From: Vicugna vicugna
Taxonomy: Eukaryota
Reading direction: 5' to 3'
Length of the DNA: 64,000 bases
Assembly (NCBI GenBank): GCA_013265495.1
Contig: MU057560.1
Span: 3,160,909 to 3,224,908, forward strand
The notes beneath the pieces are model-generated. The model was not told the DNA's origin. It saw only the letters and a program-made list of their open reading frames with translations, and did not search any database. Below are positions 4,616 through 64,000 of this stretch, one piece after another; position 1 is the first letter of the stretch; every line of letters begins with the position of its first letter. The position numbers and the translations under genes were made by a program.

Positions 4616-4747
4616 TTAAGTGCTGTTCATGTATTTTCTTGCGATGCTCTGACTGTCTATAAATACGGGGTCCAGCGAGGCCACCTTTGCTGCTATGAAG
4701 GCGTGGATGCAATGCAGAACAGCCGTCAGGTCCTGAAACTCGAGTTC
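4616..4747 (-). CDS. SNTG2: SNTG2 terminal coding exon 17 equivalent (132 nt incl. TAA): ELEFQDLTAVLHCIHAFIAAKVASLDPVFIDSQSIARKYMNST*
   Basis: Strong acceptor gtgttttttcttacag|GAA; 35/43 identical to the recalled human C-terminus, with the stop at the same position. Confidence 0.95.
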   Translation of the reverse strand, partial: ELEFQDLTAVLHCIHAFIAAKVASLDPVFIDSQSIARKYMNST

Positions 4748-7177: not shown

Positions 7178-7837
7178 GCCTCCCTCCGCACCGCCCCTCC
7201 TCCGGGAACCCCTTTCTCAGCACTGTCCGTTCACATCTGGCCACCGGCTGACTCGCGGTGGCTGAGGAGCAGTCTCCAGGGGAGTTTAACCTCCAGATCG
7301 TCAGAGAGGGGAAATGGCCGCCTCGTTCCTCCCAGTGGCAGCGTCTGCGTCACGCACACTTAAGTGGGCCGTCAGAATCGTGCACGTGCAGGTGCGTACA
7401 CCATCAGGGTTTAAGAGGAGAGAAGGGACAGCTCTGTTTCTGTCCCGGTTTCCTGGAGAACAGATGAGAAACCAGGCTCAGAGCCGTCCCTGGGGGGGCT
7501 GCACTGCGAGTCCCTCACTCTCTGTCAGGCCCTTGGTCAGCTCCATCCTCAGGAGGAACGGGGGCCCTCAGGATGCTCCCCTGAAGATCCTGCCCAGGCC
7601 CGGCCTCCCTCCGCACCGCCCCTCCTCTGGGAACCCCTTTCTCAGCACTGTCCGTCCACATCTGGCCACCGGCCGACTCGCGGTGGCTGAGGAGCAGTCT
7701 CCAGGGGAGTTTAACCTCCAGATCGTCAGAGAGGGGAAATGGCCGCCTCGTTCCTCCCAGTGGCAGCGTCTGCGTCACGCACACTTAAGTGGGCCGTCAG
7801 AATCGTGCACGTGCAGGTGCGTACACCATCAGGGTTT
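7178..7837. repeat. 235-bp direct repeat: copies 7178-7412 and 7603-7837, period 425, 190-bp unique spacer
   Basis: Copies identical apart from three substitutions in the first ~75 bp. Confidence 0.95.
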
Positions 7838-7950: not shown

Positions 7951-8823
7951 AAGCTGGGGGTGGAGGGGACACCATCCCTCCCCGCAGCGAACCCCGGCTT
8001 CCGTCCTTGCACTTCACCTGTACTTCACTTAAACCGCACATCGCCAGTTAGCAGAACAGTAGGAAAGTAAGTCCTTCATTTCATAAAGCTTGTCTTAAAG
8101 TACAAAGAAGATAAAAAATGCTGTGAAGCCGAACCTGCAGCCATCGGCATCATTCTGGGGTCAGCCCCCGCTCCTGGAATGACCCAGGCTCTGTGAGCCG
8201 CGGGTGGCGGGAGTCGCTCCCACCCCATGCTCTGGGCTCTCCCCTGGGGCTCGGGAAGCTCAGCGCTTTCGCTCTCATCCCCACGGCGGCGCTGTGGCTG
8301 CTCGCCCCAGGAAGAGCTTCGGTAAAACATGAAAGATTAATTGCTCCGTGGGTATTACTCCTTTAACTAAAAACTCAGTAAAAGCTGGGGGTGGAGGGGA
8401 CACCATCCCTCCCTGCAGCAAACCCCGGCTTCCATCCTTGCACTTCACCTGTACTTCACTTAAACCGCACATCGCCAGTTAGCAGAACAGTAGGAAAGTA
8501 AGTCCTTCATTTCATAAAGCTTGTCTTAAAGTACAAAGAAGAAAAACAAATATTTTCTATAAAAAATGCTGTGAAGCCGAACCTGCAGCCATCGGCATCA
8601 TTCTGGGGTCAGCCCCCGCTCCTGGACTGACCCAGGCTCTGTGAGCCGTGGGTGGCGGGAGTCGCTCCCACCCCATGCTCTGGGCTCTCTCCTGGGGCTC
8701 GGGAAGCTCAGCGCTTTCGCTCTCATCCCCACGGCGGCGCTGTGGCTGCTCGCCCCAGGAAGAGCTTCGGTAAAACATGAAAGATTAATTGCTCCGTGGG
8801 TATTACTCCTTTAACTAAAAACT
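7951..8823. repeat. Near head-to-tail tandem duplication: copies 7951-8375 and 8382-8823
   Basis: About 425-bp unit; copies differ by a few substitutions and a 17-bp insertion (aaaaacaaatattttct) in the second copy. Confidence 0.95.
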
Positions 8824-9439
8824 AAGTCAACGGAACATAGTTTTCCCCGAAACTCCTGGTTACCTGGCGTGAAGTGCCCTCTCCCTCCAGCCCTGGCAAG
8901 GCTCCGGGTCCCACTTCAGAATCCTGTCCCCAGCTCTCTGTCTGAACCGAGCATTCACTCCAGAAATTCTCACAGATTGAGATTCCCTGACTGGCATTTG
9001 CCATCTCGTAAGTTGTCATAAACACAGAACAGCAGCTGAAAGGCAGTTTCTCAAAACCGCCAAGCGTGTTTCCTTGAGGCTGTGCACAGGCACGCGTCCC
9101 ACTCCGTGGGGCTCACTACTAGGACGTGGGAACTACGTTTGTCCTGCTTCACTCCCACCTGCGAGGCCCTGGGAGGGCCCAGGTGCGGTGCCCCGGCCCT
9201 TGCGTCACCTGTGGCTGGCCGAGACCCTGCCCGCGGGCCCGGGGCAGGCGCGGGTGGGGGGCTGCGGCAGCTCTGGGACCGGGGAGGGAGCTGAGGTGGG
9301 CACGTGTTTAGTCTGGGTCTCCTCGGATGTACGTGCGTCTCGCCCTCACTTCTGTGTGGTTGGGTCGTCGCATTTGCAACTCTGTCTCTATTTCGTCAAG
9401 AGACACCTACACACCACTCAGGCTGCAAGCCTGCAAACC

Positions 9440-10499: not shown

Positions 10500-11080
10500 N
10501 NNNNNNNNNNNNNNNNNNNNNNNNNNNNNNNNNNNNNNNNNNNNNNNNNNNNNNNNNNNNNNNNNNNNNNNNNNNNNNNNNNNNNNNNNNNNNNNNNNNN
10601 NNNNNNNNNNNNNNNNNNNNNNNNNNNNNNNNNNNNNNNNNNNNNNNNNNNNNNNNNNNNNNNNNNNNNNNNNNNNNNNNNNNNNNNNNNNNNNNNNNNN
10701 NNNNNNNNNNNNNNNNNNNNNNNNNNNNNNNNNNNNNNNNNNNNNNNNNNNNNNNNNNNNNNNNNNNNNNNNNNNNNNNNNNNNNNNNNNNNNNNNNNNN
10801 NNNNNNNNNNNNNNNNNNNNNNNNNNNNNNNNNNNNNNNNNNNNNNNNNNNNNNNNNNNNNNNNNNNNNNNNNNNNNNNNNNNNNNNNNNNNNNNNNNNN
10901 NNNNNNNNNNNNNNNNNNNNNNNNNNNNNNNNNNNNNNNNNNNNNNNNNNNNNNNNNNNNNNNNNNNNNNNNNNNNNNNNNNNNNNNNNNNNNNNNNNNN
11001 NNNNNNNNNNNNNNNNNNNNNNNNNNNNNNNNNNNNNNNNNNNNNNNNNNNNNNNNNNNNNNNNNNNNNNNNNNNNNNNT
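10500..11080. other. Assembly gap (581 N)
   Basis: Run of N directly after the minisatellite. Confidence 1.
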
Positions 11081-15007: not shown

Positions 15008-15091
15008 CTTTGGGAAGCAGGTGAATCCCAGCGCGAAGTCCAGCGTGAAGCACAGGGCGTCTCCCCGCCAGCTGCACAGGTACGTTTTGGA
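15008..15091 (-). pseudogene. SNTG2: SNTG2 exon 15 equivalent (84 nt, 9 nt short) with AT donor: SKTYLCSWRGDALCFTLDFALGFTCFPK
   Basis: Acceptor catacttttttag|TCC; matches recalled human SRTYMCSWQGEMLCFTVDFALGFTCF; followed by AAG|atgagc (gtgagc-like). Read-through meets an in-frame TAG at 14992-14990. The 3' boundary is inferred. Confidence 0.85.
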
Positions 15092-18000
15092 CTAAAAAAG
15101 TATGAATTGGGAGAAAACGTTATTTAATAATGCCGTCTTTTACTATTTTTAATTAAAAACGAAATACAAAGAGCATCACACGGAGGAGGGATAAATTAGG
15201 ATTTGGGGATCAGCAGACACAACTACAAAATGTAAAACAGACCAGCAGCAGGGAGCTACATTCAACGCGCTGCGGTACCCGCCAGTGAGGAAGGGTGCAT
15301 ACGTGTACAGCCGAGGCACCGTGCTGCACACCAGAAACAAACTCAGCCCTGTAAATCAACGCGACATCCATCAGAAAAGCTACTACGAACAGGAAAAAGG
15401 CAGAGACACCCCACCACACGGGTCTTCCGCCGCCCGGCCCTCCCTGCCCCCTCCTTCTCCGGCCTCTGCTTCTCCTCCTCTCACCCCTTTGCAGTTTGTA
15501 GCATGGACGGAGGCCCACACAAATGCTGCTCAGTTTTGCCTATTTCTGAGATTCGTGGAAATGGACTCAGAACTGCTGTGCCAGCCCAGACCCTCTGCAA
15601 GCCGTGCTGACGGGCCCAACCCGTCCCCTCCGCTTGCTGACTTTGCCCTTCTAGTGAGTGCAAACATCTCACTGTGACGGGAGCGGACGTTTCCCTGACA
15701 CTTGGGGGCTCCCCCTCCGGGTGGCCCACCCTCCACGGTCCCTCCCAGGCTCCTGTCCCGGGAGCCCCTGGCCCACATCCCTCCTCTGAGCATCTCCAGG
15801 TGGAGGTGGGGACCCGGGGGGCAGCCCTCGGAGGAGACATGTGTTCGAGCCCTGGGCACCCTCCCTGTCTGGGATGGGGTCGGTCACGTGTGTGTGTCAC
15901 ACAGTTCACTCAGGAAATACCTGGCCTGGGACACATTCAACATGCTGGACGTGTGCAAAACGTCACGAGGCGGGGAAATCCTACGTGTTTTCCCTCGAGA
16001 ATAAATGTCTGCATGGCTCTGTTTCTGCACCGCCCTTCAGGGTGGGTTCTCCCTGAACACGGCGGCTTGGACTCCGCAGGTGTGCCGGGACGTGGGGCCC
16101 CAGGTGGGCGGTGGGTCACGGACCCTTTGACTAGGGAGGCAGAACTCTGTCCATCCTGGTGGAACAGGACAGGCCAGAGCACCTGACACCACTGCCCCGC
16201 GGGGAAACGCGGAGGGAAGTGTGACAAATGACTGATTTCCAGGGAGCTGCTGCTGCTGGAGACACGACAGGCCGGGCCAGGTGCGGGAGGGCTGGCGGGG
16301 AGGCCGGGCTCTGATCTGCTTCTGGGCGAGTGCCCACCACCTTCCACGTCCTGCACCCCCCAGGCTCGAAGCAGGAGGGTGGGGGCAGGCCCCTCACCCC
16401 ACAGGGCCCGCCCACCGTGAGGGCGGCCGTCTCTTCGGAAGCGAGGCCCAGTGCGCAGGGAAGCTCTTCGAAGGCCCTGCTTTCCTGGGGGCTGTGACCG
16501 GGCTCCACGCCCCGCGCTAAGACAGTCCGCGTCCCGCGGGCCCTCCCTCTGAAGCCGCCCCACCGACGGACGGCAGTGTGCCCGGGGAGGGTGCGGGGCG
16601 GTGAGGGAAGAACTGTAAGGCGCACAGGATTCTGGAACCTCGGGCCGTCCAGGGGAGCAGGAAGCCCGCGTCCTGCTGCGTTTGTAGCTGTTGGTCTGTC
16701 AGATTTTGAGATACGCAGACAGAGACTAAGGCAGCAGGGGGTGACGTCACGCACCACCCAGACTCACTCAGCAGTGAGCCCCCCACCACATGTGTAACCC
16801 CGACCCTAACATGCCTCCTGTGACCCTCAGTTCCATTCCAGGAGAAACTTCCCCGTCCCGACATTTCCCGTGTCCTTATGTAAACCCTTGGGGAACAGGG
16901 TTAAAACTAAGGAATGCTTGAGGCACTGAGACGGACTAGCTCATCAAAGAGGACATCTTCTACTAACAGAGTCATTCTCCCCATAAGCTTCTGCCCCTTT
17001 GGGGAAGTTATTCTGGGGAGATGATGTTATCTGAGTAAACAGGGAGCGGAATCTGCCGTGCTGGCTGTGCACACACTGCCCTATGTGCTGTGACATCCAC
17101 TTGACGCCTGGACCACTGGTCTTCAGCCTCGTGGCCACAGCTCTAGAGCTCACAGGGATGCGGGACCATGCCCAGCAGGAGGCGGGCACGGATGCTGCCC
17201 AGATGGACCCACGCTCCAGGGTCACCGAGCATCACTATCTTCCCAGCATTCCAGCTCGAGTCCGGGGGGATGTGGGATTTGATCCTCCAAGCTCCGATGA
17301 AACAGGAACAGCACAGACCCCAGACAAACCCCATGCCCGACTCAGAGCCAGAAGACCTGCTCACCTGCACCTCCTGCTTCTGGGACAGAGACGTGCACCG
17401 AGCACGAGCCCGGCCAGTGTCCTCCGGGCAGCAGGCGTGACTTCTCCTCCGGACGTTCCGGAACTTAAACACAGGCAGGGCGTTCACGTTCCTCCGACGC
17501 CCAAGGACGCAGACTTGTGATTCTTAAGACGCCGAGATACTTTGCTCATGATCTGTGCTGGAGTTTCTCCCCTTATTCTGACACCTGCGTCCTCAGGCGA
17601 CGCGGTTCTTCGCTGGTAGAATGTGCTGTGACTGCAGGCTGGAGGAAGCATCGTCTTGCCTAAACCACCGTGGCTGATCCATTTACAGTTAAAATTAGCA
17701 GAGACTGGAGTTCCTTCTTGCATTTCTGATGTTTTCATCAGAAGTACGTTACTTTCTAAATATAAGTCGGGTCAGCGGTCATTATAACCTAATCATTCTA
17801 GAAACTCCCATGATTTTCCCTCCGGTGACTCAGTGCATCTCTGCTCTGCAGATGACCTAAGGTTCTCTTATGAATTCCTCCATTTACCAACTATTGAGGT
17901 GCACAAAGTACCCCGTGCTGAGAGGAACTAGGGAAGTGGTCAAAACCTCACTCCTGGTAGGGGCGAGGCTGGGTTGGAGCACAGGGTCCGGCTGTAACAC

Positions 18001-18419
18001 CTGGATGGCTCTCGTTGCTGCACGCATCACCCTAGGTGCCTCCTCCAGGCAGAAAGGAGCCTCCGCAGTCTTCTGACGAGGGTGGCAGAGGCCAGCGGTG
18101 TTGAAGAGGACCAGACTGGCAGCAGCGTGTGCCACGTCGTGATAGAGGGGAGTCGTAAACACAGCGGCCAGCTAAGAGGTGATGGCTGCCCCCCAGCCTG
18201 AGCACACGCGAGGCCATCTGCACCAGGCCCCCGACTCTGGGGTGCTCAGGGAGTTCCAGAACGTTCTTAGCCCCCGGGCCTAGCGGGGTGTGGCTGGCGT
18301 CCAGCGTGGGGGTCGTCTAGGCGGCGCTCCTGCAGCTGCAGGACGGTCTTCCAGGCTGTCCTTCACTCTCCCAGCCATGCTGCCATCACTCAGTGCCGCT
18401 CCCCTTTAGGTGAAATCCT

Positions 18420-18720
18420 TCAAAAGCCCTCCACGGGTTGGGACACAAAGCAAGTCTTCACAATTCAAAAGAATGAAATCTCACGTTGGAACGAAGCGAG
18501 GAATCACTGAGAGAAGGAAAAGTGGAAAACAAGAAAATACATGGAAATTAAACATCCTCTTGACAGCAAATGTGTCAAATCAAAGGCCACAGAGACATCA
18601 GAAAATACCCTGAAGTAAATTAAAGTATAAACACGACCAACTGGAACTTCGGGGAGGCAGCGACACCAGTGGTGAGGCTGCCGCAGGGAGTCGCGCTGAC
18701 GAAGAAGAAAGCTTTCAAGT
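18420..18720 (+). mobile_element. L1 ORF2 fragment (region after the endonuclease domain)
   Basis: Track ORF 18410..18613 contains NTWKLNILL, an L1 ORF2 motif; A-rich L1 composition. Confidence 0.7.
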
Positions 18721-20289
18721 CAGCATCTCACTTGATGCCTCACAGGACTTGAAAAGGAACAGAGTAACCCCAAGGGCCCGAGGAAACAAGGACCGAGCCA
18801 GAGGCAAAGCAGAGGCTAGAGATGCGGGCGGGGCTGAGCGCCTTGAACCGGGTTGCCGGACACTGGCCGTGGAAACCGAGTAACAGGTTGAGAACCAGCT
18901 CACGGGAGCCGTGTCTGGAACACTGAAAGCTGGAGTGCGCCACGTTACACATTTCTGTCTTCTGGTCGGTTTCCATTCCTGATTAGGGCCCGACCTCCAT
19001 CTGCATTTTAACTCAGTCACGCTCCTCAAGGCCCGGGGCCTCCCTGACACCTCAGGGACCTACCCAGTGAACAGTGGCTCCCTGTGCGTGGGGATGGACA
19101 CTCCCCTGTGAGGCGCACACACCGCGGTGCACACAGCACAGGCCGGCTGCAGCCTGAGGCAAACACACACGCCGAGAGGACCAAGCATCGTCCTGCTCCT
19201 CCGAAGACACAGCACCGTGGGATGGACACCGTCAGCGGGACGTCGGCCACGAGACGTCCACGTCCTGGTCCCCGAGCTATGGGTGTGCTCCCTTCATGGA
19301 AAAGGGGGCTTTGCTCATGTGATCACGTTCAGGACTTTGAGGGGGTGGAGCCTGGGTCACCCTCATCAAGTTATGTGAGCCCTTACAAGTGGGGGCCGTG
19401 TTCCCCTTGGCCTGAGGGACGGGAGATGGCATGAGGGTGACGGGGGCACTGCTGGCGCCGAGGACGGAGGAGCCCCGGGGGCCCCAGAGGGAGAGCTCCG
19501 CCAGCAGCCTGGCGACCACCCTGAGCCGCAGGTCTGTGGGACAGCGGGAGGGGCGGCGTTTCCCCCACGGCGCTCGCGGTGCCCCTCACGCAGGAGCAGG
19601 GCGCCGACAGACGCTCCGGCTGCTCTGCTGCATCTGACTGTGTGCTTCTGGCATTCGGGTTTTCAGTGACCTTCAGCAGCTTCGCTGACTTCTTCCCCTT
19701 TCAAGGCCGCCTGGAGATAAACTGTCGTCTCAGCCTCGTCCTTGAACCAGCTCCCTTTCCTTTTCGTGTCACACCTGCCTTTTCTGAACAGCCTCCCAGG
19801 AGCCACCTTCCACCGGGTGGCTGTAACTCGGGCCACGGCCTCCCGTGTGAGGACCTGGCACAGCAGCAGCCCCTTCGCAGGCGGAGCCTCACGTCCCCAG
19901 GCTCCTCGGCCCCGAGACGGAGCAGGGGCGGCGCCCCCTCTCCTGCCCTCACTGCACCAGGACCCTCGAGTTTCTCACACTCAGGAGGTCACCTGGCCGA
20001 CCCTGTGGGGTCTCCCCAGTGCAACACCCCCCACTCCCACGTCCTCCTCCTGCCTCCTGTCTGTGAAAACTTCAGCCAAAGAATAAATTTAATCAGAGGA
20101 AGAAAAAATACAGAAACAAAGGAAAACAGCCAAACGAGACAAAATAACGGCTGAGCCATCACACAAAGGCAAAGACCCGCAGCTCCTTCTCGAGGGCTGT
20201 GTGTCCTGAGCCCTGTCCTTCGAGCTGTTTGCAGGCGCTGAAGCCCCCACCAGGTGGAAGAAGTTGCCTGCGTGCCGACCAGGCTGCAG

Positions 20290-20659
20290 CCACGACAGAA
20301 GCTGCCACAGTTCTGAGCACTGGCCTCAAGGAAGTGGGAACCAACCAGCCCTGGGACTGAAGATCAGCTGCACTTAAAAAACAGTCAAGGTGACGCTGGT
20401 CAGACCCCGCACGGCCGATTCCAAGGTGCCTGTCAGAGCTGACCGTGCTGCTCCACCTGCCACCCCCGCCTGGCACCCCAAAACCCCCGTTAGAAGCTCT
20501 TGCCCCTGATCGGCAGTGGGGAGTGGCTCTTTGGGGCGTGAGTCCCCCTTCTCCCCAGGAGGCCAGCCTCCTGAATAAAGCAACCTTTCCTTCCTACCCA
20601 CACCCGTCTCTCGGTTTGGGGCTCTTAGGTGTGGAGCAGCTGGACCTGAGTGGGTAACG
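20290..20659 (+). mobile_element. ERV1-class solo LTR
   Basis: Internal gactgaagatcagctgcacttaaaa..gacgctggtcagacc, polyA signal aataaagcaacctttcc, 3' end gagcagctggacctgagtgggtaac. Confidence 0.7.
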
Positions 20660-23354
20660 AGGACCCACCCTTGGCTTGGAGACAAGCACGACTGAGCAGG
20701 AAACCACTCGAGGGGCGGGGTGGTCGCATCTTCGCCGTCGGCCTCAGTGGGTGTTGCGTGTCTGCACACACACTGGGGCCACACGGCTGCTGCTGGTGAG
20801 GGTCTGCGCATGAGCACGCAAAGTGCCAGACTCGGACTCGCGAAGCTTGCCCAACCACAGCACCCACAAGGGGAGCAATGCTGGTGCTGGGATGGAAGCA
20901 CCTGCTGGGTGTTTCTAGGAGGCTGGGAAACGAACACATCGAAGGCGCTGACTGTGAGCTCCTCTGTGAGGTCACTGAACTGCGTACCTTCCTTCAGTGG
21001 CGAGGAAGTCCTAGAGAGGGTGTGCAGACAAACACATGGCCATTACAGGAACCACCAGGTTTAACGTGCATTCAGACAAGGCTCCAGCTCGGTGAGGAGC
21101 CCACAGGACCAGCCTCAGAGCTGCGACGCCCTCGCCTGTGGGAGTGTGTGGACGCGGGGAAGATGCAGCACGAACAGGGTGTCAACAGAAGCATCCCAGT
21201 TGCGCTGAGGGTTTTCACGTCACACAGCCCTGGCTGCAAAGCCACATCCACAAACGCCCAGGTGAGTCAGAGCCGCGACAAGCGTGCTGTCGTAATGAGC
21301 ACAACCTAACTCTTAACCGGGTCGTGAAGCCGGTGCTTCTGGTAAGAAAGTCAGTGACCGCGTAAGTCTAGCCCGAGTGTCCTTCAGGGTTTCACGTGAC
21401 CCTCCGTTAGGAGCGCTTGGTTCATTTCTCGCAGGGGAGCAATGAAGCGTCTCCGCAGCAGTCCACGTGGTGTCACAAAACCTCCCACTACAGGGGTGTC
21501 GTTTTTTTAATAACTCGGCCTGAAATTAATTACAAATTTATCTGAAAAATCTAAGCATTTAAGGAAATGCTGTTTTCATATTTTAATGCCGGGGGCTTTA
21601 TAAACGTCAATTAATTAATTTTCATAGCACGCACTCATGAACTGTATTCATATGAAATGATGGGTGTTCACTAAGTTTAGTGATTATTGTGATAGTCATC
21701 TCGTGACGCGTGTCAGTTGTCACTGCGCTGCACACCCTGACCTCGTGCGGTGCTGCGTGCCAGTCACATCTTGGTAAAACTGGAAGGAAAAACCACATTC
21801 TTGGCCATGCCTTTCTCCGCTTGTTTCTGCCGTGAACTGTCTACCCCCCGCTTTATCTACTTACTTATTTGTGTTGTTTCAGAGTCGTTTGTTTGCTCTT
21901 TCGTTGCAGGAAAGTCAGCCTGCGACTTTCCGTGTCGGTGTCCGGTGTTCGGTGTAGCCGTCCTGGGCGTTTCTTGCCGGTGCCTGCAGGCTCCTCAGCG
22001 ACCCCGGCTCGTTGGGTCTGACCTCACTTTTCCTTTCGAGCTGAACTCTGATTCTTTCACTGCACCCATCCCTCTTCTGCTTTAGAGGAAGCCGCCCCCG
22101 TCCCAGGCCACACTGCGGACGCTGGTCAGCAGAGGGCGGCCCCTGGACAGGCCTTTCTTCCATCCAACAGGTTCACGACCTAATCTGGCAGGATCAGAGC
22201 CCGACTCCCTGGGGAGCTGTGCCCCCTCCGTGAGCGCGGGGAGAGGGCCGGCTGCACCCTTGCGTCTGGCAGAGGTCCTGCAGCAAGAGGGAGGCATTCA
22301 GGGAAATCCAGACCTCGGCACCCAACCGGGGGTGCGCGAGGAGCCACTGCCCGGCAGGCACCTGTTCTCACGATGCTGACGGTCGCTGAGTAAAGAGTCC
22401 TGTGACTTGTGGCCAAAGGCAGCCTGTCTGATGCGCATTCTTCACGCTGCGTGCTGCTGTAGGAAAGAGATCCTTTTGGAAAAAACTTCAAATTCTATCA
22501 GGGCATCCCTGGTATAAACAAAAATGTTGTGAGCTGATGTGAAAAAATGCACAGAATTTTGCGCACTGCAGCGCAGCACGCACATATGAGTACACGTTTA
22601 AGAAGGAAGAGAAGGACCACCGAGATGGGAAAGGCGCCTGACAAACACGCGCCCTGACGCCTGCGTCTGCGCCTGAGCTCGGCAGCGGGTCGGGGAGAAG
22701 CTGGGCCTCGCGGGGCTTCGATGCGTTCCGGTGCAAATACGACACTGAATTCTGGCCCCCTCCGTGTGCCACCTGCAACACAGATGCTGTTTAAATACAA
22801 CAAGCCAAGCAAGTGCTCTTGAGACGGGAGGGCCGCGTGACAAGCGCCAAACGGGCGGCTAACTCGGACTTAGGATTTTGCTGTGAAATGTACTGACCCA
22901 GATAAGACGCAGAGCGAGATTCCTGCGAAGACAAGTGTGTTTAAATCCAGAGCCAGGGACGGGCTCGGGGACGACCTGCAGGACCCTCTGAGAGGAGGAG
23001 GGGAGCAAGGAACGCGGGAGAAGCGCTGCCCACGGCCGCCGCGCTCAGGGTGGAGGGCCGGCTGCCCCACAGGGACGGGGCCTCTGGGGACGTGGAGCTG
23101 GGCGTCGGGCCGGGCAAACCCGCGTGAAGACGGAGCGCCAGACACGCCCGGAACCACAGAGCCAGACACGGGGCGGGGGCAGCGAGCTCGGCTGGCATCT
23201 GCAGCGTCCCTGCACTTTCTGGGCTCTTCCCCGCGTTCCCTCTTGTCTCAGGGAGGCGGTGTGTTTAGCAGAGAGAACGTGCCTCCCAAGACCGAAGTGC
23301 GCAGGGCGGGATCGCAGGGTGTGGCTGCCCTTCTCCGGGTGACCGTGGAGAAGC

Positions 23355-23485
23355 CCCCAGCCTTTCTGAACCTGTTTTTCTCTTCAGTGAAATGAGAGGA
23401 GGAACCATGATGGCTGCGTCTCAGGCGTGTTTGGAAAAGTAAATACCGTGTTAAATGCACCTGGTCTGGCACAGGGTGCACTAAA
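23355..23485 (+). mobile_element. MIR SINE remnant
   Basis: ctgaacctgtttttctcttcagtgaaatgag...gttaaatgcacctggtctggcacagggtgcact resembles the MIR core and 3' end. Confidence 0.55.
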
Positions 23486-24627
23486 CTAACACAACTTGAA
23501 ACGGCTCATGGTGCCTCTGTGATAACCCTTGGTTTGCAGATTTGCTAATGGTGTTCTGGAGAAATCACTGGTCTGAGTTCATGGTCAGGCCAGGACTTGA
23601 GCCCTTCTGACTAATTCCTTCTACCTCCTGAGTCTAGAAAACCGAGAAGTCAGGGACCGACTCTCTGGCGCCGAGGTTGCTCCCGACCGGGAGTGGGGGT
23701 GCTGCAGGGCCTTCCTCGGACACAGGCATCCTGAGTGAGAAGTCAGAGCTGCAGATCGGGGACCCCGCCCCCGAGAGGCCGGGACGGCCTTTCAGTCCTG
23801 CACAGTCGAGCCCCCGGGCTTCCTCCAGCCCTTGTGAGGCCCCGCACAGCTGGCGTGGCCCCTGGACCCTCCCCATCCCAGCTCTGCCCAGTCCTGGGAA
23901 AAGGACGGGGCCACCTACTGTCACAACAGAGCTGCAATGATGACACGGAACCTTTTCACACTCAAAACAGCGCTCAGTAACAGGGCCGCCGCCCTTGGTG
24001 ACCAAGTCCACACCGAGGACGTCAGAGCCAGGCCGGGGGAGCCCAGAGCCGTGCTGTGGGGGTCAGTCAGCTCCGTGGTGCCCCACTGCCTTCCCTCCAC
24101 GCATGTCCCCCCGAGAAGGGCTCTGCCATTCTGCGAGGATTCTTGCGCACTCTTCCTCCTCCATTCAGTCCAAGCACACTCACTCCAGTCCAGAGAGACA
24201 CCTGCTGCTGTGAGGGGGCAGAGCCATCCAGATGCACAGGCTGTCCGCATTCTCACTGCGTCATTAAGTCGTCAGGGGGCCCACTAAGCGCCTTAAAGTG
24301 TGACAAATGTCCAGGTAGCATCACCGTACACCCACCGGCGGACGGACCCCAGGGAGGCGGGGTGCGGTGGGCTTAGACGCTAAGTGTCGTGGTCCCTCCC
24401 CACATTAAGCATAACGACTGAAGTGGGTGGGACGGAAGCGTCTCACCTGTCCCTGTAACCCCGCACCCACCTGCTGCGCATGCCGAGCACAAGACCATTT
24501 GACCTGGTGACTGGACGGAAACACTCAACCTGTGAGGTTCATTTTCACGGAATGATTGTCACACATGCTCTCATTTGTGCTTCAGGCCCCGAGCAGGTTT
24601 CCGCAGAGAACAGTGTGTGGCACTTAC

Positions 24628-24834
24628 CCAGGCCCTCTGCACCTCCAGGAAGGCGGCCCTCTGGAAGGACCTCTCCCACGCGGCCAGCTCGCTCCCCAGC
24701 CCCACGCTGAACACGTGGCTTGCGCCGTGGCCACCGAGGATGCTGAAGCAGTAGGGCCCGTGGTCCTGGCCATCAGGGCCCCCAAGGCCCAGGGAGAGGG
24801 CAGCCGGTGCCCAGCTGTCGTCCGGAAGCCAGAG
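24628..24834 (-). CDS. SNTG2: SNTG2 exon 14 equivalent (207 nt, intact frame): LWLPDDSW...PYCFSILGGHGASHVFSVGLGSELAAWERSFQRAAFLEVQRAW
   Basis: Acceptor cacctgtttcag|CTC, donor TGG|gtaagt; 69 codons, same as human; lies within track ORF 24571..24906. Confidence 0.93.
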
Positions 24835-29334: not shown

Positions 29335-29406
29335 CTGGTGAACTTTAAATAGCACCTCACAGAGGTCATAGGTTTTTGCCGCTCGGCCCCAGTCTAACAT
29401 GCTCAC
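29335..29406 (-). CDS. SNTG2: SNTG2 exon 13 equivalent (72 nt, intact): VSMLDWGRAAKTYDLCEVLFKVHQ
   Basis: Acceptor ctctgtcctcacag|GTG, donor CAG|gtgagt; 17/24 identical to recalled human exon. Confidence 0.93.
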
Positions 29407-40557: not shown

Positions 40558-40674
40558 AGGAGGAGCCACGAAGACGCGGAAGGACGAGCCCTTCAGGGCC
40601 AGGAACTTGGGTCTGAAGGTCTGAGAGGAGCCGGCCCCGTCCAGCCTCTCGCTGGCCCATCCCATGTGCACAAC
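40558..40674 (-). pseudogene. SNTG2: SNTG2 exon 12 equivalent (117 nt, PH domain start) with non-canonical GA donor: VVHMGWASERLDGAGSSQTFRPKFLALKGSSFRVFVAPP
   Basis: Acceptor ttttcccctgcag|GTT; 30/39 identical to recalled human exon; the expected donor position reads CCT|gaaagc rather than gtaag. Confidence 0.9.
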
Positions 40675-47583: not shown

Positions 47584-47622
47584 CTGGTCACCAGGAGAAC
47601 AGCACGCATTCACCATTCTCAC
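47584..47622 (-). CDS. SNTG2: SNTG2 exon 11 equivalent (39 nt, intact): VRMVNACCSPGDQ
   Basis: Acceptor cccctctctctgcag|GTG, donor CAG|gtagga; 8/13 identical to recalled human MKMANKCCSPSDQ; expected size and position. Confidence 0.88.
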
Positions 47623-49148: not shown

Positions 49149-49276
49149 GTCCTGCAGCGTCCGGTGGCTGATGTTTGCTGACACGGCCCTGAGCCAGTCA
49201 GCGCCGTCCTGGGCTGTGTGAAACTGCAGGAGCCCGTGCTGCCCTGTCTGGGGCCAGCACCTTGAATGCGCCGGAC
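49149..49276 (-). pseudogene. SNTG2: SNTG2 exon 10 equivalent (128 nt) with 2-nt deletion frameshift
   Basis: Acceptor ctcttcccgcag|G, donor GAC|gtgagt. The 5' part reads SGAFKVLAPD in one frame and the 3' part reads GLLQFHTAQDGADWLRAVSANISHRTLQD in another. Confidence 0.9.
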
Positions 49277-51317: not shown

Positions 51318-51438
51318 CTCAGCCCTTCTGCCCCCGCTCTGCACCGCGAGATCCGGACGGGGGCAGCGACAGGGCGTCCAGCCAGCGCTTCTCGTACTTT
51401 GGTTCATCACCTGCGAGCGAGGGAGGTGAGGACGGGGC
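51318..51438 (-). pseudogene. SNTG2: SNTG2 exon 9 equivalent (121 nt) with 7-nt deletion frameshift and premature TGA at 51321-51319
   Basis: Acceptor tcttgcacag|GCC, donor GAG|gtgtgt. The first 28 codons read APSSPPSLAGDEPKYEKRWLDALSLPPS. The homologous tail RISRCRAGAEGL(R) lies in a different frame. Confidence 0.9.
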
Positions 51439-60845: not shown

Positions 60846-60946
60846 TGTGGGGCCAGAGTTTCCGTTCAGATGCAAACCGCTGTCAAAGAGGGGTGAGGAG
60901 GTCCCACTGCCACCGGCGTCAGGGTCGCTGGGTGGTCCCGTGGGCC
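60846..60946 (-). CDS. SNTG2: SNTG2 exon 8 equivalent (101 nt, intact): (G)PTGPPSDPDAGGSGTSSPLFDSGLHLNGNSGPT
   Basis: Acceptor tattctgcttgcag|GG, donor ACA|gtaagt; matches recalled human SSPLFDSGLHLNGNS; three codons longer than the human exon. Confidence 0.93.
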
Positions 60947-63765: not shown

Positions 63766-64000
63766 TATGATCCAGCAATCCCACTCCTGGGCATATATCC
63801 AGAGGAAACTCTAATTTGAAAAGACACCTGCACCCCAGTGTTCATANNNNNNNNNNNNNNNNNNNNNNNNNNNNNNNNNNNNNNNNNNNNNNNNNNNNNN
63901 NNNNNNNNNNNNNNNNNNNNNNNNNNNNNNNNNNNNNNNNNNNNNNNNNNNNNNNNNNNNNNNNNNNNNNNNNNNNNNNTCTGCAACATGGATGGGCCTG
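63766..64000 (+). mobile_element. Younger L1 ORF2 end / 3' UTR, interrupted by a gap
   Basis: tatgatccagcaatcccactcctgggcatatatccagag..aaagacacctgcaccccagtgttcata..gcaacatggatgggcctg. Confidence 0.9.
63847..63979. other. Assembly gap (133 N)
   Basis: Run of N inside the L1 fragment. Confidence 1.

What the first reader, a model, noticed from the sequence alone, without database searches (positions are those of the whole stretch)
51318..51360. Exon 9: 7-nt deletion and premature stop
Seen: after CCG TCC the Met-Ala codons plus one base are missing. The remaining 37 nt align to the recalled human tail in another frame (RISRCRAGAEGLR versus RISRYKAGTEKLR), and the running frame stops at TGA 51321-51319. 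Inference: any protein would keep the PDZ domain (upstream of the window) but lose the PH and SU regions. A deletion flanked by CC suggests microhomology-mediated repair.
Basis: partly seen in the sequence, partly recalled or inferred. Interest (0 to 1): 0.75.

Follow-up and report, generated by a model that had tools for sequence, protein, structure and literature searches.

The report
Broken SNTG2 exon 9, dead gene
Exon 9 of the brain scaffold gene SNTG2 (gamma-2-syntrophin) in this camelid-like genome has lost 7 bases and runs into a stop codon, and it is one of several independent breaks showing that the gene, intact in other vertebrates examined, is a dead gene here.

Summary
On the minus strand, 51438-51318 is a 121-nt exon with AG/GT splice sites. 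It matches exon 9 of gamma-2-syntrophin (SNTG2).

Against the 128-nt exon 9 of the takin (Budorcas) gene, the window has one clean 7-nt gap. The gap removes the conserved Met-Ala codons plus one base. The frame then reads 11 wrong codons and stops at TGA 51321-51319. The remaining 37 nt still encode the conserved RISRCRAGAEGLR in the old frame.

This is one of four lesions in exons 8-17:
- exon 9: -7 nt
- exon 10: -2 nt
- exon 12: donor GT>GA
- exon 15: -9 nt, donor GT>AT and a stop soon after

The conceptual protein departs from the consensus at 13 of 145 near-invariant SNTG2 positions. Eight other artiodactyls depart at 0-4.

Best reading: SNTG2 is a unitary pseudogene in this animal, lost fairly late on its lineage. 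Any transcript should be degraded or encode only a PDZ stub.

I could not reach any second camelid sequence, so fixation and sharing among camelids are untested. The microhomology idea rests on 2 bases and is not diagnostic.

The scan's own notes on this window already listed the gene-level loss and the other three lesions. This is an ordinary kind of event, apparently unreported for this gene.

The parts
51318..51438 (-). SNTG2 exon 9, 121 nt instead of 128 nt
   Evidence: AG/GT sites, matches SNTG2 residues 180-222 of takin P0128; single 7-nt gap against takin exon 9
51353..51357 (-). Deletion junction (7 nt missing; placement ambiguous over a CC overlap). Removes the Met-Ala codons plus 1 nt
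   Evidence: alignment: takin GTCCATGGCCCGAG against window GT-------CCGGAT
51319..51321 (-). Premature stop TGA in the shifted frame, last full codon of exon 9. In the ancestral frame these bases lie within CTG AG(G) = Leu-Arg
51320..51352 (-). Exon 9 tail, still encoding ISRCRAGAEGL in the ancestral frame
   Evidence: 11/13 identical to bear RISRCKAGAEKLR
49149..49276 (-). SNTG2 exon 10, 128 nt instead of 130 nt. The 2-nt loss lies within 49245-49236. The entry frame hits TGA at 49200-49198
40558..40674 (-). SNTG2 exon 12, coding part intact. Donor at 40557-40556 is GA instead of GT. A GT 27 nt downstream is in frame
   Evidence: CCTCCT|GAAAGC against takin CCTCCG|GTAAGC
15008..15091 (-). 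SNTG2 exon 15, 84 nt instead of 93 nt. Donor at 15007-15006 is AT instead of GT. Read-through stop TAG at 14992-14990
60846..60946 (-). SNTG2 exon 8, intact, 9 nt longer than takin (in frame)
47584..47622 (-). SNTG2 exon 11, intact (39 nt)
29335..29406 (-). SNTG2 exon 13, intact (72 nt)
24628..24834 (-). SNTG2 exon 14, intact frame (207 nt) but with changes at conserved residues
11321..11431 (-). SNTG2 exon 16, intact (111 nt)
4616..4747 (-). SNTG2 exon 17 with the normal stop TAA at 4618-4616

Best explanation
The window carries exons 8-17 of the orthologue of SNTG2 (gamma-2-syntrophin) on the minus strand. SNTG2 is a neuronal PDZ-PH-SU scaffold of the dystrophin complex that binds neuroligins. 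Exon 9 has suffered a real germ-line 7-nt deletion that removes the conserved Met-Ala codons and one further base. Translation entering from exon 8 reads 28 correct codons, then 11 wrong ones, and stops at a TGA that is simply the old CTG-AGG read out of frame. This stop lies seven exon junctions upstream of the normal end, so by the standard 50-55 nt rule a spliced transcript should be degraded by nonsense-mediated decay. Any protein that escaped would be a stub of about 220 residues with the PDZ domain and no PH or SU domains, and so without the domains C-terminal to the PDZ. The deletion is not alone. Exon 10 has its own 2-nt frameshift, exon 15 has lost its donor site and 9 nt, and exon 12 has lost its donor site. 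Conserved residues are also being replaced at an elevated rate. The gene is therefore a unitary pseudogene in this genome, inactivated late relative to the split of camelids from other artiodactyls. Shown: the lesions, the orthology and the excess of changes at conserved sites. Inferred: nonsense-mediated decay, loss of function, timing, and fixation in the species.
For: Gene identity: the exon 12 peptide finds gamma-2-syntrophin of brown bear, mouse and marsupials. A profile search returns 996 hits, and the 120 listed carry SNTG2/gamma-2-syntrophin names (one has no name) and span sharks to mammals. Ten exons are colinear with takin SNTG2 exons 8-17. The lesion: one 7-nt gap in an 86%-identical DNA alignment with conserved splice sites and a stop at 51321-51319. 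Further lesions seen against takin: exon 10 -2 nt, exon 12 GT>GA, exon 15 -9 nt and GT>AT. Two of these are base substitutions and none is a homopolymer-length change (no run of one base lies at the gaps), so assembly error cannot explain the whole set. Relaxed constraint: 13 of 145 near-invariant columns are changed against 0-4 in eight other artiodactyls (Fisher p = 3.5e-7). There are 50 amino-acid changes on the window lineage against 27 on the takin lineage. Domain map. Function of SNTG2: PMC3276563 and PMC11967788.
Against: No second camelid sequence or read set could be reached. The 7-nt gap therefore rests on one assembly that has gaps (N runs at 10500-11079 and 63847-63979). Pairwise dN/dS against takin is still 0.26, and exons are far better conserved than introns (80% against 53-64%). 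Decay is therefore modest, and the loss could be very recent or even polymorphic. Six of ten exons are perfectly intact. The exon 12 lesion could be bypassed by an in-frame GT 27 nt downstream. Exons 1-7 and the promoter are outside the window, and an intact second copy elsewhere in the genome was not excluded. Carnivores also show raised counts at conserved columns (dog 8/150), so part of the excess could come from GC-biased substitution in this GC-rich region.
Confidence: 0.8

Rival explanations
1. The 7-nt gap is an assembly or sequencing artefact, and the animal's real exon 9 is 128 nt.
For: The window comes from a gapped assembly (N runs). The region is GC-rich, and a C5 run sits 8 nt upstream of the junction. 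No independent sequence was available.
Against: A 7-nt loss in non-repetitive sequence is not a typical error of any common platform (general knowledge). The flanks align cleanly. Three further lesions in the same gene, two of them substitutions at splice donors, and an excess of changes at conserved residues fit a gene that is truly no longer maintained.
Confidence: 0.07
2. The lesions are real but are carried on a loss-of-function haplotype that is still segregating. The species as a whole keeps a working SNTG2.
For: Decay is mild: dN/dS is 0.26 against takin and six exons are intact. Rough dating allows anything from about 1 to 16 million years.
Against: Four independent lesions plus 13 changes at near-invariant positions on a single haplotype would need a long period without selection. 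That is hard to reconcile with a functional allele persisting alongside it.
Confidence: 0.08
3. The gene still makes a useful protein through alternative splicing. Possible routes are skipping exons 9 and 10 together (121 + 128 = 249 nt, in frame) and using cryptic donors, or producing a selected PDZ-only isoform.
For: Exons 9 and 10 together remain a multiple of three. Exon 12 has an in-frame GT 27 nt downstream. Exons 11, 13, 14, 16 and 17 keep open frames and splice sites.
Against: Exon 15 has no in-frame substitute donor before the TAG at 14992-14990, and the nearest GT adds 14 nt. Skipping exons 9-10 would remove 83 codons conserved across vertebrates. Conserved residues are also being lost in the still-open exons (R>W in exon 16, E>G in exon 14).
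Confidence: 0.05

Closest known systems
SNTG2 / gamma-2-syntrophin of other mammals (e.g. Budorcas taxicolor P0128, Bos indicus P0125, Ursus arctos XP_057165241)
   Same: Same order and orientation of exons 8-17 and the same splice phases. 60-85% amino-acid identity per exon to Dromiciops (40% for a misaligned exon 8 piece), and 80% coding DNA identity to takin.
   Different: Exon 9 is 7 nt short, exon 10 is 2 nt short, the exon 12 and exon 15 donors are mutated, and exon 15 is 9 nt short. The reading frame cannot be followed from exon 8 to exon 17.
Lineage-specific unitary pseudogenes of mammals, i.e. genes lost in place with introns retained
   Same: The intron-containing orthologous locus is retained, with several independent frame and splice lesions and more replacement changes at conserved sites.
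   Different: Decay here is mild, with no large deletions, six of ten exons intact, and pairwise dN/dS still 0.26. Sharing with other camelids could not be shown.
Short deletions with junctional microhomology (replication slippage or microhomology-mediated end joining)
   Same: With takin as proxy for the ancestor, the deleted 7 nt begin with CC and are followed by CC.
   Different: Only 2 nt of overlap, which is expected often by chance in GC-rich sequence. The true ancestral camelid sequence is unknown, so the mechanism cannot be assigned.

Membership tests
SNTG2 (gamma-2-syntrophin) orthologue | Sequence similarity to named gamma-2-syntrophins rather than other syntrophins | tested here: met
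   the best hits are NCBI and UniProt gamma-2-syntrophins; ten exon-sized tblastn matches.
SNTG2 (gamma-2-syntrophin) orthologue | Conserved exon-intron structure, colinear with a known SNTG2 gene | tested here: met
   exons 8-17 match takin exon for exon, with the same boundaries and phases.
SNTG2 (gamma-2-syntrophin) orthologue | Conserved neighbourhood (TPO/PXDN side of the locus) | not tested
   Only 4.6 kb lies beyond exon 17 in the window, and no neighbouring gene was searched for.
SNTG2 (gamma-2-syntrophin) orthologue | PDZ domain in the N-terminal part | not testable with these tools
   Exons 1-7 are not in the readable window. The PDZ domain maps to residues 56-135 of takin.
Unitary (unprocessed) pseudogene | A frame-disrupting lesion relative to intact orthologues in related taxa | tested here: met
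   -7 nt and a TGA. Orthologues are intact in Bos, Ovis, Budorcas, Hippopotamus and cetaceans.
Unitary (unprocessed) pseudogene | Several independent lesions | tested here: met
   exon 10 -2 nt, exon 12 GT>GA, exon 15 -9 nt and GT>AT.
Unitary (unprocessed) pseudogene | Relaxed purifying selection | tested here: inconclusive
   There is an excess at conserved columns (13/145 against 0-4, p = 3.5e-7) and a 50-to-27 lineage asymmetry. Pairwise dN/dS is nevertheless 0.26, and no branch model could be run for lack of more orthologous DNA.
Unitary (unprocessed) pseudogene | No intact copy elsewhere in the same genome | not testable with these tools
   The rest of the genome is not searchable. The scan's notes list SNTG2 only on this window.
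Unitary (unprocessed) pseudogene | Lesion confirmed in independent sequence of the species or its relatives | not testable with these tools
   Searches found no camelid sequence for this locus.
Microhomology-mediated deletion | Shared bases at both deletion ends beyond chance | tested here: inconclusive
   a 2-nt CC overlap against the takin proxy.

The most novel reading that the evidence does not exclude
SNTG2, a neuroligin-binding synaptic scaffold kept intact from sharks to mammals, was lost in the common ancestor of llamas and camels (or at least of the South American camelids). These animals would then be healthy natural knock-outs of a gene linked to autism-spectrum copy-number variants.
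Probability: 0.4. Interest if true: 0.45.

Novelty: new member of a known kind. Interest (0 to 1): 0.35.

Why it matters
Gamma-2-syntrophin links dystrophin-family proteins to neuroligins 3 and 4X at synapses, and human copy-number changes of SNTG2 have been reported in autism (PMC3276563; PMC11967788). The 120 best database matches, which include eight other artiodactyl entries, show it intact across vertebrates. A large-brained, social mammal that lives without it would show that the gene is dispensable in at least one natural setting. It would also be a place to look for compensation, for example by SNTG1. For genome annotation, the practical point is that this locus should be labelled a pseudogene and not repaired into a "low-quality protein". 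As a type of event it is ordinary, since lineage-specific gene losses are common and other losses have been noted in this same genome.

Tried and rejected
(1) I looked for independent camelid sequence of exon 9.
- Protein searches with the two longest ORFs spanning the junction (212 aa on the plus strand; 67 aa in the coding frame) found nothing.
- Exact-pattern scans of metagenome contigs with the junction 30-mer and with a degenerate conserved exon 9 pattern found nothing.
- None of the 165 fetched proteins carries window-specific peptides.

(2) I tried to fetch more orthologous genomic DNA for a branch-specific dN/dS test.
- Bos, Hippopotamus, Orcinus and Equus genes exceed the 100-kb limit.
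- Three shorter isoforms are not on record.
- Only takin was obtained.

(3) Pfam on the exon 9 peptide alone found no match, because it is too short.

(4) Compensation between the exon 9 and exon 10 frameshifts (-7 and -2 = -9) is rejected as a rescue, because the TGA at 51321-51319 lies between them. Summing to a multiple of three has a one-in-three chance.

(5) Shifting the donor along the GTGTGTG run does not help, because the stop lies upstream of it.

(6) A 10-residue identity to bear SNTG2 at about 45990 in intron 11 is chance. There is no DNA similarity to exon 14.

(7) The literature searches found no report of SNTG2 loss in any mammal. Searches were badly designed and returned mostly irrelevant papers.

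Full report
**What is at the coordinates**

Read on the minus strand, 51438-51318 is a 121-nt segment. A polypyrimidine tract and TTGCACAG precede it, and GTGTGTG follows it. In the frame entering from upstream it reads APSSPPSLAGDEPKYEKRWLDALSLPPS, then GSRGAERGQKG, then TGA at 51321-51319. One base of the exon is left after the stop. In a different frame the last 37 nt read RISRCRAGAEGL(R).

**Which gene it is**

I did not rely on recalled human sequence.
- The peptide of the intact exon at 40674-40558 was searched against 1.84 billion representative proteins.
- The named hits are gamma-2-syntrophins: Ursus arctos XP_057165241, Mus musculus XP_011242175 and Dromiciops XP_043841209.
- A profile search returned 996 hits. 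The 120 listed carry SNTG2 or gamma-2-syntrophin names (one has no name) and run from sharks to mammals. They include Bos, Ovis, Budorcas, Hippopotamus and five cetaceans. No camelid appears among those 120, but the list is truncated, so that is not evidence.
- tblastn of five of these proteins against the window gives ten colinear minus-strand matches.

I fetched the 80.7-kb takin (Budorcas taxicolor) SNTG2 locus, L001, and mapped its 17 coding exons.

| Exon | Window coordinates | Length in window (nt) |
|---|---|---|
| 8 | 60946-60846 | 101 |
| 9 | 51438-51318 | 121 |
| 10 | 49276-49149 | 128 |
| 11 | 47622-47584 | 39 |
| 12 | 40674-40558 | 117 |
| 13 | 29406-29335 | 72 |
| 14 | 24834-24628 | 207 |
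| 15 | 15091-15008 | 84 |
| 16 | 11431-11321 | 111 |
| 17 | 4747-4616 | 132 (with stop) |

**The deletion**

A DNA alignment of the window exon with takin exon 9 (128 nt) is 86% identical over 191 columns. Both splice sites are conserved, and there is a single 7-nt gap: takin GTCCATGGCCCGAG against window GT-------CCGGAT. The gap removes the codons for Met and Ala and one base of the next codon.

The orthologous proteins I read over this stretch have S-M-A-R, or a close variant of it, at this point. The 11 codons downstream are still 11 of 13 identical to bear in the old frame.

The TGA is not a new mutation. It is the old CTG-AGG (Leu-Arg) read one base out of register, so the stop follows directly from the deletion. 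Which seven bases were lost is ambiguous over a CC/CC overlap. That 2-nt overlap is all the support there is for a microhomology mechanism. It is compatible with one but not diagnostic.

**It is not alone**

Compared with takin:

| Exon | Change against takin | Consequence |
|---|---|---|
| 10 | 2 nt short | Its own entry frame stops at TGA 49200-49198 |
| 12 | Donor is GA instead of GT | An in-frame GT lies 27 nt downstream |
| 15 | 9 nt short and donor is AT instead of GT | TAG six codons on, at 14992-14990 |

Exons 8, 11, 13, 14, 16 and 17 are intact with AG/GT sites.

The exon 9 and exon 10 shifts add up to -9. The TGA lies between them, so they do not rescue each other.

Two of the four lesions are base substitutions, and none is a homopolymer-length change. 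Assembly error therefore cannot account for the set.

**Is selection relaxed?**

I translated the exons in their ancestral frames, with X at the breaks, and aligned them with 53 vertebrate SNTG2 proteins.
- At columns where at least 95% of the others agree, the window differs at 13 of 145.
- The eight other artiodactyls differ at 0-4. The highest other mammal is dog, at 8 of 150.
- Fisher's test against the pooled artiodactyls gives p = 3.5e-7.
- Polarising window-takin differences with outgroups gives 50 changes on the window lineage, 27 on the takin lineage and 24 ambiguous.

The decay is still mild.
- Pairwise dS is 0.56, dN is 0.146 and dN/dS is 0.26 over 347 codons.
- Exons are 80% identical to takin, against 53-64% for intron flanks.

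A crude partition puts the neutral period at roughly 1 to 16 million years of an assumed 64-million-year branch. This is an inference with wide error. It depends on how dS is split between the two lineages, and I would not lean on the number. The qualitative conclusion is a loss that is late relative to the camelid-ruminant split.

**What the lesion does**

Pfam on the takin protein places the domains as follows:
- PDZ at residues 56-135
- PH at residues 279-401
- the C-terminal syntrophin domain at residues 413-502

Exon 9 encodes residues 180-222.

The stop lies far upstream of the last exon junction. By the established 50-55-nt rule, the transcript should be a substrate of nonsense-mediated decay. 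Both statements are inference, and no expression data were available.

**What is known about the gene**

SNTG2 is a brain-expressed scaffold of the dystrophin complex that binds neuroligins 3 and 4X (PMC3276563). Gamma-syntrophins bind Dp71 and Dp140 and are found in cortex and hippocampus (PMC11967788). Full-text searches found no report of SNTG2 loss in camelids or any other mammal.

**Limits**

- I could not obtain any second camelid sequence for this locus. Fixation in the species and sharing among camelids are therefore untested.
- Exons 1-7 are outside the readable window. Exon 7 was not found in the 3 kb upstream of exon 8.
- A second intact copy elsewhere in the genome was not excluded.
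- The N runs were left untouched.

**Verdict**

The wider reading is that SNTG2 is a unitary pseudogene here. That is an ordinary kind of event, apparently unreported for this gene, and of moderate interest. The scan's own notes on this window already listed the gene-level loss and the other three lesions, and I re-checked each of them here.

Noticed in passing
window:60947-64000: Exon 7 of SNTG2 (29 codons, the end of the PDZ region) was not found in the 3 kb upstream of exon 8 by tblastn or blastn, although intron 7 is only 1.9 kb in takin. It may lie beyond the window, under the N run at 63847-63979 (left untouched), or be lost.
   Followed up: partly
window:7178-8830: Two adjacent two-copy tandem duplications lie in intron 16. 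One has a unit of about 425 nt at 7178-7837 (99% identical). The other has a unit of about 431-448 nt at 7951-8830 (97-98% identical). Tandem Repeats Finder did not report them.
   Followed up: partly
window:40531-40557: After the mutated exon 12 donor (GA), an in-frame GT lies 27 nt downstream (GAG|GTGCTG). If it were used, nine residues (ESMPWRAWE) would be inserted into the PH domain, so this lesion taken alone is not necessarily inactivating.
   Followed up: partly
window:49277-51317 and 15092-24627: Intron sizes differ strongly from takin. Intron 9 is 2.0 kb here against 9.7 kb, and intron 14 is 9.5 kb here against 2.6 kb. Exon 8 carries 9 extra in-frame bases.
   Followed up: no
window:45964-45993: A 10-residue exact match (GLGPHGFEDP) to the brown bear SNTG2 exon 14 region sits in intron 11. 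No DNA similarity to exon 14 of the window or of takin was found, so it looks like chance in GC-rich sequence.
   Followed up: yes
L001:64387-64521 equivalent in Bos: The Bos indicus SNTG2 gene range contains a separately called 44-residue thymosin-family gene inside an intron. I did not look for it in the window.
   Followed up: no
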